The translations under genes and the position numbers were made by a program. The notes beneath the pieces were generated by a model, which worked only from the letters and a program-made list of their open reading frames with translations, was not told the DNA's origin and searched no databases. Positions 1-28,815 of a stretch of DNA of 64,000 nucleotides are shown here, one piece after another (position 1 is the first letter of the stretch; the number at the start of each line of letters is the position of its first letter). Source of the DNA: Salpingoeca rosetta (lineage: Eukaryota > Protista > Choanoflagellata). The stretch lies in contig JAWQFM010000009.1 of assembly GCA_033442325.1 (NCBI GenBank), positions 730,583 through 794,582 on the forward strand. The letters are read 5' to 3'.

Positions 1-920
1 CGCATGTCGGTTGTTCGGTGCTCTGCGCAGCCGTCGTCGGAGCGTCCATCTTCACTCTCCGCCTAACAAGTGTGTGTGTGTATGTGTGTGTGCGCGATGC
101 GATGGTTGGAGAAAGAGGGCACAGGTCAACAAGCACAAGCAGTGTTATCCAGACACAAATGTATGCCGCCACATTACACATGCGCGCGCGCGTGTGTGCA
201 TGTGTGTGTGTGCGTGTGTGTGGCCTCACCTGCAAGCGAATAAAGCGCCGAAGCGCCTTCAAGTAGTCGAAAGGAACCGATGTCACCTTCGGGTTGTGTG
301 ACAGCGCGAGCAAGATGGCGTTCCCGTGTCTCCAAATGCTCTTCCACAAGCACTGCTCCTCAGCGCCTGTATTGACGCAAGTACACATGTGAGATTTGGC
401 GAAGAGAGCAGTTGCAGTGCAACCTCAAGCTGCAACGCTTTTGCTTCACGTGATGGAATGTAACGCCACACGCACGCCTCAGTCACCAAGTTTCGCTTCA
501 CACACAAACACATACACACACACATACACACACGCACACACACAAGCACACCCTCTCTCCTCTCCGTGTGCGTTCACCTGGCGTGTTCAAGGAGTGGTGG
601 ATGAAGGTGGGGTGGATCGGCTGGCCCGCCAACTGCTTCTGAATGGCGCTGGTGAAGGCGCGACGCACCTTGGCACCTCCCAGTGCGGGATCGTACAGCA
701 GAACACCCTTGCAGGGATGCTTGGAGCTGCTTCTGACTGCCTTATGCACCTCATCTCGCACCATTCTCGCGATGGCACCCACACCATCGCTGCGTAGCAC
801 ACCAGCCTGCAGCAAACCGGGCACGTTCACCATGCGGCACCCTGCATACTCTGACGCGTGCACTGCCACTGCACCATCGTCATCCCACCCCGCCAGCAGC
901 ACCACAAAAACGTCGCTCAT
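1..920 (-). CDS. Hypothetical spliced protein, 3' part runs off the window start
   Basis: ATG at 920 (MSDVFVVLLAGWDDDG...). Exons 920-578, ~366-230 and ~62-<1 join in frame across GT-AG introns (...HSLNTP|GAEEQCLWKSIWRHG...RFIRLQ|AESEDGRS...). No family recognised. Confidence 0.65.
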
Positions 921-13568: not shown

Positions 13569-14605
13569 CTGCTTGTCTGCCTCTTTACTTGTCTGCCTGT
13601 CTGCCTTGCGTTTCTTCTTGCTTCATCCCGCTCCTCCCATGACTTCAATCGCCTCACCTTCCCCCCCCCCTCTCTCTCTCTCTTCCACAATCTTCGTCTC
13701 CCTCGTCACCATTTCGTTCCAATGGGCATCAGGACATCCTTGCTGATCTTGAGCAGACGGCCAAGGCGAATCAGGCCGCCAGCAACTACGAGGAGGTCAA
13801 GCTCAAGGTCGGGTCGTGTTGTGTGTGTGTGTGTGTGTCTGTGGCTGTGTGTGTCTGTGTGCGTGCGTGTGTGTGTGCGCGCGCGTGTGTGTCTGCGTGC
13901 GTGTGTCTGCGCGTGTGTGTGTGCGTTCGTCCTCAGTCCAGCATGTGATCCCTAATAGTTTTGTTTGGCTTTGTTGTCGACGCCAGCATTGAACTTAAGC
14001 TCACAGCCATATGTGTGTGTTCCCATTAGAAGCGTGAGGAGGCGGCGCCTGCTCGTCCACCGCCGGCCGCTGCTCCCCAGCAGTCCGGTCTCGCCATGTA
14101 CTACCTCGGCCAGATCAGCCGCACAGACGCAAAGGTGTGTGTGTGTGTGTCTACGTGTGTGCGTCTATGTGTGTCTGTGTGTGTGTGTGTGTGTGTGTGT
14201 CTGCGTGTGTCTGTGTGTGTCTGGTGCCTGCGGTCCTCACCGCCCATTTCCTCGCCACCATGTGTTGTGCGTGCGTTGCAGCGCTACTTGGCAGGGCAGC
14301 CTGTGGGAACCTTCCTCGTCCGCAAGAGTGGGCGCGGTCACCCTTACACCATGGATGTTGTGTACGTTGCGCTCTCCATGCCTCTGTGTGTGTTTGTGTG
14401 CACGTGTGTGTGTGTGTGTGCGTGTGTTTGTGCGCATGTGTGTGTGTGTGTTGCCAATGTTGCTTGCGCTTGTGACCTGCCAACGAGTCACCATTGGTGC
14501 GTTGCGTTCCCTAGGTATGACGGTGAGGTGAAGCACATCCCCGTGCTGTATGATGGCGTCCTCTACGGCCTCGCGAAACCCCTCTCCTTCGACAGCGTCG
14601 AGGTG

Positions 14606-14636
<31 letters not shown>

Positions 14637-14834
14637 TTATTGCCCTCCTTTGTGCTCGCCCACAAGAATGGATGCCAATGCTTGTGCCTCGCTCCTTCGC
14701 GTCACCTCACGCACTGCGCCGCTGCTGTCACATCCTGCCAGGCGCTGGTGAAATTTTACCGCAAAGTGCCGCTCTCCGACAGCATCAACACCATCCTCAC
14801 CGGCGCAATCAAGGAGAGAACCACCATCCCATGA
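7579..14834 (+). CDS. PI3-kinase class IA regulatory subunit (p85)-like protein: SH3-C1-SAM-C1-RhoGAP-SH2-coiled coil-SH2, more than 20 exons
   Basis: SH3 ([20 protein letters not shown]...EGAFPWSYV); C1-like (HKF...CTVCGFTCH); SAM ([10 protein letters not shown]...[21 protein letters not shown]); second C1-like ([11 protein letters not shown]); RhoGAP ([15 protein letters not shown]...[16 protein letters not shown]); SH2 (WYAGNMDR...GSFLVRAS); coiled-coil linker; SH2 (YYLGQISR...GTFLVRKS). Stop TGA at 14832-14834. Confidence 0.85.
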
Positions 14835-14974: not shown

Positions 14975-15341
14975 TCGCCCTCCTTTTGCGTGTTTGCTTC
15001 TTTCTCCCCTGTTGCTTCGTGTCTGATGTGCATGATTGCTTTTTGAGGGTCGTTTTCGTGTATGCGAGATGGATACAAACCGCAATTGCCAAAGCAGTGC
15101 AGTTCATTTTATCGCCGTGCAGCTTGTCGCTGACAATGGAGGCAGGGGGTTAGTGGCGCTTGCCACAGCACACACACGCACACAATGAACACAACCACAA
15201 AAAAACTAGTGGCTGCGCCTCAAGAGACAGACAAAGGAAGCCAAGGATTGGCAGGGGCGAAGGGATTGTTGTTGAAGGGGCAGAGGGCTCGCACTTAGGC
15301 ACTTGTGTGGAGCCGCATGCAGTGTGGGCTAGTGGGTTTGT

Positions 15342-16066
15342 TTACATGGCACGAACAGCACGGCGAACGGTGGGCACAAAGGCGCCTTTGCCGAGGCCAA
15401 AGCCGTTGTACACGACGTTGTTGCCCGAGGTGACGAATGGTGTGTCATCCCCGTCAGCGCTGTGGCAGCAGGCGGCGTAGATGTAGCCTTTGCCGCCTTT
15501 CTTCCCCACGCCTTCGCTTATGGCGTTCATGATGTCGCCGCGGTGCAGGTACATGTCACGGCCGTCGCTTAGTCTGGTGAGGATGTTCACACGCAGAAGA
15601 GGCAAGACGGCGTGTGAGGTGGGGTGTTGAAGAGGCAGGGGTGGTGTGTGTGGGTGTGTGTGAGTGTTTGTGTGTGTGTTCGTGTGTGTGTGTGCGTGTG
15701 TGGATGTGTGTGGATGTGTTGTCGAAGCAAACAGAGCGCATTCACCACCACAGTACCCCAAACACAAGCAGATGAATCCACTTACTGGACGCCATCGGGG
15801 CGAACCCTGCAGCCGTGGCAGACGATGAGCACGCGAACGCCCTTGCCCTGGTTGGCCTCGGCCACGGCGTTCTTGAGGGCCGCGAGCGCGCCATATGGCT
15901 TGTAGTAGTTTGCAACCACCGCCGATGGGCTGGGCTTGTGGTAGCGGGTGAGCGCGTTGCGCACCACCCACAGCTTCCGCTCCACGCTGTAGTTGCGGTT
16001 TCCAATGCGCCTCAGTGGATAGAACACCACCACGGGGAGGCCGCTGTCTTCCTGCTTCGGTGCCAT
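15342..16066 (-). CDS. Small (170 aa) putative clan CD / caspase-hemoglobinase-fold cysteine peptidase, 2 exons
   Basis: Exons 16066-15786 and 15573-15342 (GTAAGT...CAG intron) total 513 nt in frame. Contains VRVLIVCHG and, about 46 aa later, GYIYAACCHS, resembling the His-Gly and Cys dyad motifs of caspases/metacaspases. The gene model is solid; the family call is tentative. Confidence 0.6.
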
Positions 16067-16781
16067 GCTCGCCTGTTGGTGTTGCTTCTTGCTTGCTCGC
16101 TTCTTGGTGTGCCTACTGCTCTTTCTTGAAGTGGGTCCAGTTGGCTGGTCGGTCGATGAGTGCGAAGCTGGTGTGGATGCTCTGGCAGGTAGGCAGGCTT
16201 GTGGTGTTTGTGTCGAGGGAGCAGAAGAAATGTTCCTCGCAGCTCGCTCACACCGCACACTCACACACACACACTCACGCACGCACGCTCATCGCGGCGC
16301 AACAGCTCCTAACACCCGCACAGCCGGGAATAAAGGACACCCCGACTGGCTGAAGAGAGCCAAGGCGAGGAGTGGGCGAGGTTGATGTTTCTCATGCATG
16401 AAGCTTGGTGTCATGAGCAATCAACAGCACCTGTGAACCATTCGAACGAAAAAAAAAAAATTGCGTGCATGCACGCGATTTGAATTTTGCGCGGCAGAGC
16501 TTGTTGCTGTTGTTTGTGTTTGGCGCGCCCGGTTTGAGAAAGCCAAAGAGACACATTTCCGTCCACCAAGCACCACAAGCAACCAGCCAGCAGTCTCCTT
16601 ACTGTTTCTCTGTTTGTTGTATCACCCCAAGCACCACGACAGCGACAACGCCAGCGCCAGCGCACGCAGAGCACACGGGCCACCAATACAGTCACAGGGC
16701 AGCAGTGCAGTGCACGCCAGGCAGCAGTCGCACAGGGACTGCTTGATCGGCTACTCACATCAACACGCTCGGTGGCTGACC

Positions 16782-28815
<12,034 letters not shown>

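What the first reader, a model, noticed from the sequence alone, without database searches (positions are those of the whole stretch)
15342..16066. Minimal 170-aa caspase/metacaspase-like (clan CD) protein with an intact His-Cys dyad
Seen: a clean two-exon gene with beta-strand+HG (VRVLIVCHG), a short 'LSDGRDMYLHRGDIM' segment, and beta-strand+Cys (GYIYAACCHSA) about 46 aa later. Established: clan CD proteases (caspases, metacaspases, legumain, CHAT) place His in hhhxHG and Cys in hhhhxC at roughly this spacing, and the metacaspase motif is D[SAC]CHSG. Inference: this is a p20-like catalytic unit with no prodomain or obvious p10. The metacaspase S1 Asp is replaced by Ala, which implies a different specificity. 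True caspases are regarded as animal-specific, so such a stand-alone enzyme in a probable choanoflagellate may be an unrecognised family.
Basis: partly seen in the sequence, partly recalled or inferred. Interest (0 to 1): 0.75.

Follow-up and report, generated by a model that had tools for sequence, protein, structure and literature searches.

The report
Orphan mini caspase-fold protein, choanoflagellate
A small, expressed two-exon gene of the choanoflagellate Salpingoeca rosetta encodes a 170-residue protein with no detectable relatives; it is predicted to have the core fold of caspase-type proteases with the catalytic histidine and cysteine in the right places, but that rests on predictions and weak alignments and needs a bench test.

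Summary
The minus-strand gene 16066..15342, with a 212-nt GT..AG intron at 15785..15574, encodes exactly the 170-aa public protein PTSG_04802 of Salpingoeca rosetta. A spliced contig from a public run skips exactly that intron.

The protein matches no Pfam, NCBIfam, PHROG, PADLOC or PDB sequence. An exhaustive phmmer search of 1.84 billion representatives found only itself and three spurious repeat proteins. It is single-copy.

Three lines of evidence point to clan CD (caspase/metacaspase/CHAT/legumain):
- **ESM Atlas model** (pTM 0.79): 8 of its 10 listed structural neighbours carry a clan CD family.
- **AlphaFold model** (pLDDT 62): Foldseek's top hits in PDB and in the viral library are caspases, though E is only about 3e-3.
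- **Profile alignment**: hhalign against a bacterial C14 profile puts H84-G85 and C130-H-S on the catalytic columns. It scores 22.9, above 60 of 60 shuffles and 92 of 93 unrelated alpha/beta controls, and within the range of true CHAT relatives.

Verdict: probably a very divergent, minimal clan CD domain with an intact His-Cys dyad. It has the core through beta5/alpha4 but no alpha5/beta6. Activity is untested, and nothing shows it to be a true caspase.

The parts
15100..16246 (-). Transcribed region covered by the spliced contig. The contig runs about 127 nt beyond 15100 and about 39 nt beyond 16246, ending in simple repeats at both ends.
   Evidence: X4 record 3, 1101 nt, depth 187.7, in two pieces (15100-15573 and 15786-16246). 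Depth falls to 5-13 beyond 16244.
15786..16066 (-). Coding exon 1: residues 1-93 plus two bases of codon 94.
15574..15785 (-). Intron of 212 nt, GT..AG, phase 2. The 5' part is G/U-rich and the 3' part is CA-rich.
   Evidence: One search gives the sequence. One search shows a joint that skips 212 nt with ends CT..AC on the + strand.
15342..15573 (-). Coding exon 2: the last base of codon 94, residues 95-170 and the TAA stop.
15812..15817 (-). Codons of His84-Gly85, the proposed general base and oxyanion-hole glycine, at the C-terminal end of predicted strand 3 (76-84).
   Evidence: DSSP of the model. One search aligns them to the G-H-G of the C14 consensus.
15459..15470 (-). Codons of Cys129-Cys130-His131-Ser132. 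C130 is the proposed nucleophile, at the end of predicted strand 4 (122-130).
   Evidence: One search aligns C130-H-S to the C-h-s of the consensus. One search gives the alignment ends on caspase catalytic Cys positions.
15372..15386 (-). Codons of G157-A-F-V-P161, at the start of the C-terminal helix (159-169).
   Evidence: One search aligns them to the 'G-x-F-T' motif of the C14 consensus. One search gives helix 159-169.

Best explanation
PTSG_04802 is a highly divergent, minimal domain of the caspase-hemoglobinase (clan CD) type. It is a cytosolic 170-residue alpha/beta sandwich made of strands 1-5 and helices 1-4, with no prodomain and no helix 5/strand 6.

Proposed mechanism, inferred from established clan CD chemistry and not shown here:
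- A peptide substrate lies across the C-terminal edge of the sheet. It is held by the hairpin after His-Gly (86-95) and by the loop between strand 5 and the last helix (144-157).
- The Cys130 thiolate (or Cys129) attacks the scissile carbonyl.
- His84 protonates the leaving group.
- The backbone amides of Gly85 and Cys130 form the oxyanion hole.

The residue two before the nucleophile is Ala128. Metacaspases have Asp and caspases have Gln at that position, so P1 preference should differ from both. Arg19/20 or Arg87/89 might supply a basic S1 site; this is speculative.

Shown here: the gene model, expression, orphan status, the predicted topology, and the position of His and Cys in that topology. 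Inferred: homology to clan CD. Untested: any activity.
For: - Gene and transcript.
- ESM Atlas's own model (pTM 0.79): 8 of the 10 listed structural neighbours carry CHAT, Peptidase_C14 or Peptidase_C13, with TM by query 0.61-0.70.
- AF2 single-sequence model (pLDDT 62, pTM 0.66). Its order of elements is b1-a1-b2-a2-b3(H84)-hairpin-a3-b4(C129/130)-b5-a4.
- Foldseek against PDB: ranks 1-18 are all caspase-1/-4/-6/-11 chains, followed by SAVED-CHAT and MALT1. Best E is 2.5e-3, probability 0.95-1.0.
- Foldseek against viral models: rank 1 is 'Caspase domain protein', and seven more caspase/metacaspase entries are in the top 50.
- The AF2 model against the Atlas: the two top rows are CHAT, and a C13 row is also present.
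- hhalign against a profile of 28 Bacteroidota C14 domains: score 22.9, P 0.006. Four motifs align co-linearly: H-G, C-H-S, A128 on the Asp, and G-A-F on G-x-F-T.
- Controls for that score: 60 shuffles gave 12.4 +/- 2.1, maximum 17.6. Of 93 real sequences from lumazine synthase, dehydroquinase II, VWA and rhodanese, one scored 22.9 or more. Twenty-five true CHAT domains against the same profile gave a mean of 24.1.
Against: - No curated model reaches threshold, and no clan CD family appears even at E <= 10 in hmmscan.
- hhalign probability is only 2-6%. One negative control scored higher (23.3).
- The CHAT and DUF6642 profiles give no signal (P 0.49 and 0.25).
- The AF2 model is of middling confidence. 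Residues 132-156, the putative substrate loop, are below pLDDT 50.
- No homologues exist with which to test conservation of His/Cys.
- I had no model coordinates, so the His-Cys distance was not measured.
Confidence: 0.55

Rival explanations
1. It has the clan CD fold but is catalytically inert. It would act as a scaffold, decoy or regulator, like the caspase-like domain of Raptor or catalytically dead caspase homologues.
Against: His-Gly and the Cys are both retained at the exact topological positions, together with the C-H-S and G-x-F motifs. A dead domain with no relatives is under no obvious constraint to keep them.
Confidence: 0.17
2. It is a generic flavodoxin-like (doubly wound) alpha/beta protein unrelated to clan CD. 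The His and Cys would be coincidental, or would serve another role such as metal or redox chemistry through the C83-H-G-C86 and C129-C130-H cluster.
Against: Foldseek ranks caspases first in two independent libraries, and 8 of 10 listed Atlas neighbours are clan CD. Profiles of VWA, lumazine synthase and dehydroquinase II score no better than expected for any alpha/beta protein (P 0.03-0.2; VWA z 1.65 against C14 z 5.0).
Confidence: 0.17
3. It is a Cys-X5-Arg enzyme (rhodanese/Cdc25 or phosphatase-like) that uses C83-H-G-C-R-V-R89.
For: The literal C-X5-R pattern follows a buried beta strand, and these families also have small alpha/beta folds.
Against: In the model the loop leads into a beta hairpin, not into the helix that a phosphate-binding loop needs. 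hhalign against a rhodanese profile gives P 0.29 and does not align the motif. There is no Pfam hit, and no such structure is among the top 50 fold matches.
Confidence: 0.04
4. It is a young, lineage-specific orphan gene with no stable fold or function, and the predicted structure is an artefact.
For: There is no relative in 1.84 billion representatives, in metagenomes, in viral contigs or in 185,579 prokaryotic genomes. The AF2 confidence is modest.
Against: Two independent predictors give the same ordered five-strand/four-helix topology from a single sequence. The gene is spliced and well covered in an RNA-type contig. Its composition matches its neighbours.
Confidence: 0.07

Closest known systems
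Bacterial orthocaspases / metacaspase-like proteins (MEROPS C14B, Pfam PF00656)
   Same: This is the only profile with a signal above controls. The aligned H-G, C-H-S and G-x-F-T motifs are in the same order and spacing.
   Different: It scores below every curated threshold. It has Ala instead of the S1 Asp before the Cys. It is 170 aa, whereas the domains compared here are about 220-270 aa. It lacks the C-terminal helix/strand and has no accessory domains.
p20 subunits of inflammatory caspases (caspase-1/-4/-11)
   Same: These are the top Foldseek matches and are similar in size (about 150-180 aa). The strand-helix order is the same, the His-Cys spacing is 46 against 48, and C130 falls on the catalytic Cys in the alignments.
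   Different: It has no Q-A-C-x-G pentapeptide and no partner p10 chain. E-values are only about 3e-3, TM about 0.48 and identity about 12%. Caspases are reported as an animal-specific gene family (PMC6040629), and nothing here places this protein among them.
Raptor N-terminal caspase-like domain
   Different: Raptor's domain is a non-catalytic module of a 1,000+ residue scaffold. There is no sequence similarity to it.
DUF6642 (PF20347), small proteins of about 180 aa in bacteria and phages
   Same: They are similar in size. They are the nearest named clusters by language-model features (0.87, a lead only). Their sequences show F-H-G and later S-C after hydrophobic strands.
   Different: hhalign of P0001 against a DUF6642 profile gives no signal (P 0.25).

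Membership tests
Clan CD cysteine peptidases (caspase-hemoglobinase fold) | Three-layer alpha/beta/alpha sandwich with a central sheet of order 2-1-3-4-5 (plus an antiparallel strand 6) | tested here: inconclusive
   Both predicted models have the b-a-b order, and their nearest named neighbours are clan CD. Generic doubly wound folds score equal or higher Z. Strand 6 is absent. There is no experimental structure.
Clan CD cysteine peptidases (caspase-hemoglobinase fold) | Catalytic His in a hydrophobic-strand + H-G motif at the end of strand 3 | tested here: met
   V-L-I-V-C-H84-G85 lies at the end of predicted strand 76-84. It aligns to the G-H-G of the C14 consensus.
Clan CD cysteine peptidases (caspase-hemoglobinase fold) | Catalytic Cys at the end of strand 4, about 40-50 residues after the His | tested here: met
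   C129 and C130 lie at the end of predicted strand 122-130, 45-46 residues after H84. The ends of the caspase alignments place C130 on the catalytic Cys.
Clan CD cysteine peptidases (caspase-hemoglobinase fold) | His and Cys side chains adjacent in space | not testable with these tools
   Model coordinates are not exposed. Adjacency is only inferred from strands 3 and 4 being neighbours in all matched folds.
Clan CD cysteine peptidases (caspase-hemoglobinase fold) | Dyad conserved among homologues | tested here: inconclusive
   No homologue was found anywhere, so conservation cannot be assessed.
Clan CD cysteine peptidases (caspase-hemoglobinase fold) | Thiol-dependent peptidase activity | not testable with these tools
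   This needs recombinant protein and active-site mutants.
Peptidase C14 (caspases, metacaspases, orthocaspases; PF00656) | Score at or above the Pfam gathering threshold | tested here: not met
   hmmscan lists no PF00656 match even at E <= 10. My own HMM built from 28 C14 domains gives 1.1 bits. Only hhalign gives a weak signal (score 22.9, P 0.006).
Peptidase C14 (caspases, metacaspases, orthocaspases; PF00656) | S1 determinant two residues before the Cys (Asp in metacaspases, Gln in the caspase Q-A-C-x-G) | tested here: not met
   The residue is Ala128, and the local sequence is A-A-C-C-H-S.
Peptidase C14 (caspases, metacaspases, orthocaspases; PF00656) | Complete p10-equivalent region (strand 5, helices 4-5, strand 6) | tested here: not met
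   The protein ends after helix 159-169. Only strand 5 and one helix are present.
Rhodanese / Cdc25 / Cys-X5-Arg phosphatases | C-X5-R loop between a strand and the N-terminus of a helix, with a family profile match | tested here: not met
   The pattern C83..R89 exists, but a hairpin follows it. hhalign against a rhodanese profile gives P 0.29. There is no Pfam match.

The most novel reading that the evidence does not exclude
PTSG_04802 is an active, stand-alone 170-residue clan CD protease. That would make it, as far as I know, the smallest caspase-fold enzyme, working without a p10 half or dimerisation strand and with a P1 preference unlike caspases or metacaspases. It would also be the only C14-like protein in a choanoflagellate genome where six-frame searches find no canonical Peptidase_C14 or CHAT gene.
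Probability: 0.3. Interest if true: 0.7.

Novelty: new variant of a known kind. Interest (0 to 1): 0.5.

Why it matters
If the protein is active, it would define the minimal catalytic unit of the caspase fold: five strands, four helices, no p10 and no prodomain. [quoted passage not shown]

It further illustrates how predicted structure can assign an orphan that every sequence library misses.

The limits are real. It is one gene in one species, it cannot be linked to animal caspases, and all the functional statements are inference.

Tried and rejected
**Searches that found nothing**
- Exon-by-exon scans, by reference, against Pfam, NCBIfam and PDB sequences. Only sub-threshold Glyco_trans_4_4 (E 0.0047) and FGase (E 0.01-0.013) appeared, over a generic strand-helix-strand stretch. 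No such fold is among the structural matches, so both were rejected.
- Word search with exon 1 alone was blank because of the length filter. It was repeated with the stop-free ORF 16282..15785 scored over residues 73-166, which returned the public full-length protein P0001.
- PHROGs gave one hit at E 0.054, and PADLOC gave none.
- A literature search for the locus tag found nothing.

**Hits that proved spurious**
- phmmer hits P0002-P0004 are tandem-repeat proteins that match short stretches repeatedly.
- The genome-contig hit in Filimonas zeae is adenylate kinase sharing one 8-residue word by chance. I used it only to obtain a bacterial genome handle.

**Profile leads rejected**
- DUF6642, a lead from the Atlas: hhalign P 0.25.
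- CHAT profile: P 0.49.
- Rhodanese profile: P 0.29.
- C13 was too rare in the sampled phylum to build a profile.

**Steps that failed or gave no test**
- RNA raw-read runs X17 and X18 gave 0 and 2 reads, which is no test of expression.
- One call failed on a wrong handle type.

**Steps not run**
Every full-length analysis used the database record P0001, which equals the two exon translations plus the junction codon.

Full report
**1. The observation**

The gene lies on the minus strand.
- The ATG is at 16066..16064 in a good start context: A at -3 and G at +4. No upstream ATG is visible in the covered leader.
- Exon 1 runs to 15786 and is followed by GTAAGT. The intron is 15785..15574 (212 nt) and ends in CAG. 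Exon 2 runs from 15573 to the TAA at 15344..15342.
A word search with the stop-free ORF containing exon 1, scored over the exon part only, returned the public 170-aa protein P0001, 'hypothetical protein PTSG_04802 [Salpingoeca rosetta]'. It equals exon 1 + Gln + exon 2. All full-length work used that record.
- Laid on the window, a contig of run X4 (1101 nt, word depth 188) skips exactly 15574..15785, with CT..AC ends on the + strand. A DNA-like run (X1) covers the intron. Depth in X4 drops to 5-13 upstream of 16244.

The gene is therefore transcribed, spliced as modelled, and not part of a larger transcript. It is single-copy in the 55-Mb assembly, and its base composition matches that of its neighbours.

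**2. Sequence relatives: none**

- Pfam, NCBIfam, PHROGs, PADLOC and PDB sequences give nothing above noise, for the exons or for the whole protein.
- An exhaustive phmmer search of 1.84 billion cluster representatives finds the protein itself and three hits. On inspection these are tandem-repeat proteins matching short stretches.
- Pattern-plus-tblastn scans of prokaryotic genomes, metagenomes and viral contigs find no relative. The one 'hit' is an adenylate kinase sharing an 8-mer.
- P0001 is held by a source that includes choanoflagellate transcriptomes (EukProt). It therefore seems to be an orphan even within choanoflagellates, at phmmer sensitivity.

**3. Predicted structure**

The ESM Atlas holds this exact sequence with a model of pTM 0.79. 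Of its ten listed structural neighbours, eight carry CHAT, Peptidase_C14 or Peptidase_C13, including arthropod caspase-3-like and caspase-8 clusters. TM by query is 0.61-0.70.

My AlphaFold2 single-sequence model is of middling confidence (pLDDT 62, pTM 0.66; three of five models agree in confidence). Its elements are:

| Element | Residues | Note |
|---|---|---|
| b1 | 12-17 | |
| a1 | 28-42 | |
| b2 | 50-54 | |
| a2 | 57-71 | |
| b3 | 76-84 | ends in His84-Gly85 |
| hairpin | 86-95 | |
| a3 | 105-116 | |
| b4 | 122-130 | ends in Cys129-Cys130 |
| loop with short strands | 132-156 | low confidence; short strands at 140-148 |
| a4 | 159-169 | |

Fold searches with this model gave the following.
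- **Foldseek against PDB:** caspase-1/-4/-6/-11 chains fill ranks 1-18, then SAVED-CHAT and MALT1. Best E is 2.5e-3, probability 0.95-1.0, TM about 0.48.
- **Foldseek against viral models:** a giant-virus 'Caspase domain protein' ranks first, and seven more caspase/metacaspase entries are in the top 50.
- **Atlas search by shape:** the top two rows are CHAT, and a C13 row is also present.

All of these folds share the doubly wound 2-1-3-4-5 core. Geometry alone therefore shows the fold class, not the superfamily.

One further detail is useful. The ends of the alignments to caspase p20 chains put C130 on the catalytic Cys. Model 1..130 pairs with caspase-11 101..254, where 254 is the C254A position. 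Model 1..136 pairs with caspase-1 125..291, caspase-4 105..264 and caspase-2 175..326; each chain end is six residues past the residue I recall as its catalytic Cys (the residue numbers come from my own knowledge of these entries).

**4. A profile test with controls**

I took a bacterial genome handle from the chance hit and collected domains from Bacteroidota genomes: 28 Peptidase_C14, 25 CHAT, 25 lumazine synthase, 23 dehydroquinase II, 25 VWA, 20 rhodanese and 27 DUF6642. I built profiles from them and ran hhalign.

| Comparison | Result |
|---|---|
| P0001 vs C14 profile | score 22.9, P 0.006 |
| P0001 vs DMRL (lumazine synthase) | P 0.029 |
| P0001 vs VWA | P 0.055 |
| P0001 vs DHQ2 (dehydroquinase II) | P 0.22 |
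| P0001 vs DUF6642 | P 0.25 |
| P0001 vs rhodanese | P 0.29 |
| P0001 vs CHAT | P 0.49 |
| 60 shuffles of P0001 vs C14 | 12.4 +/- 2.1, max 17.6 (real sequence z = 5.0) |
| 60 shuffles of P0001 vs VWA | real sequence z = 1.65 |
| 93 real single sequences of the four unrelated families vs C14 | means 13-15; one (a rhodanese, 23.3) reached 22.9 |
| 25 CHAT domains (accepted remote relatives of C14) vs C14 | mean 24.1; 10 of 25 reached 22.9 |
| C14 profile vs CHAT profile (method check) | probability 91% |

P0001 thus behaves like a true but very remote clan CD relative, at an empirical P of about 0.01.

The alignment was not forced by any prior. It places H84-G85 on the G-H-G, C130-H131-S132 on the C-h-s, A128 on the conserved Asp, and G157-A-F on the G-x-F-T at the start of the helix after strand 5. 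This is four co-linear motifs.

**5. Reading**

The most likely account (about 0.55) is a minimal, very divergent clan CD domain with an intact dyad that is probably still a thiol peptidase.
- It contains strand 5, the following loop and one helix, which is the start of the p10-equivalent region.
- It lacks helix 5 and strand 6, the element caspases use to dimerise.
- The S1 residue before the Cys is Ala. Neither the basic-P1 pocket of metacaspases nor the Gln of caspases is present.
- Its C-H-S motif and best profile are of metacaspase/orthocaspase type. Nothing supports calling it a true caspase. Richter et al. list caspases among the core animal-specific gene families (PMC6040629).

Six-frame searches of this genome find two Peptidase_C13 loci exon by exon, so the method works in this intron-rich genome. 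They find no Peptidase_C14 or CHAT and only a sub-threshold Raptor_N match. PTSG_04802 may thus be the only C14-like protein found in those searches.

**6. Rivals**

- The same fold but catalytically inert: 0.17.
- An unrelated flavodoxin-like protein with coincidental or redox/metal Cys/His residues: 0.17.
- A Cys-X5-Arg enzyme using C83..R89: 0.04. It is disfavoured by the hairpin that follows the loop and by the null rhodanese profile.
- A structureless young orphan: 0.07.

**7. Limits**

- There are no homologues, so conservation is untestable.
- The AF2 model is only moderately confident, and the putative substrate loop (132-156) is poorly modelled.
- All E-values from fold searches are marginal. 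The case rests on agreement among independent weak lines, not on one strong result.

**8. Verdict**

The finding is best classed as a new, minimal variant of a known kind. Interest is moderate (0.5), and a simple recombinant assay would be decisive.

Noticed in passing
window 15574-15785 (-): The intron of this gene has a G/U-rich 5' part and a long CA-rich 3' part, and the minimum-energy fold pairs them in part. The folding energy is no better than that of shuffles (z 0.51). For this intron the 'complementary arms' idea of note s1-431575 is seen in composition but not in stability.
   Followed up: partly
window 14096-14700 (+): The convergent neighbour shows SH2-like motifs by eye, split by GT-repeat introns: [16 protein letters not shown] and V-K-H-I-P-V. 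A Pfam scan of the read-through ORF found nothing.
   Followed up: partly
window 16461-18746 (+): A divergently oriented gene starts about 200-700 bp upstream of this gene's 5' end. It has an [10 protein letters not shown] start, then acidic runs. The read-through ORF has no Pfam match. The two genes may share a bidirectional promoter region.
   Followed up: no
L137-L163 (Bacteroidota genomes): DUF6642 (PF20347) proteins of about 180 aa conserve Y-L-A-F-H-G and later F-x-S-C after hydrophobic strands. Their profile matches my C14 profile weakly (P 0.005). The family looks like an unrecognised small clan CD-type domain.
   Followed up: partly
G000 whole genome: Six-frame family searches of the S. 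rosetta assembly find two Peptidase_C13 loci (contigs C2 and C20). They find no Peptidase_C14 and no CHAT match at E <= 0.01, and only a sub-threshold Raptor_N match.
   Followed up: partly
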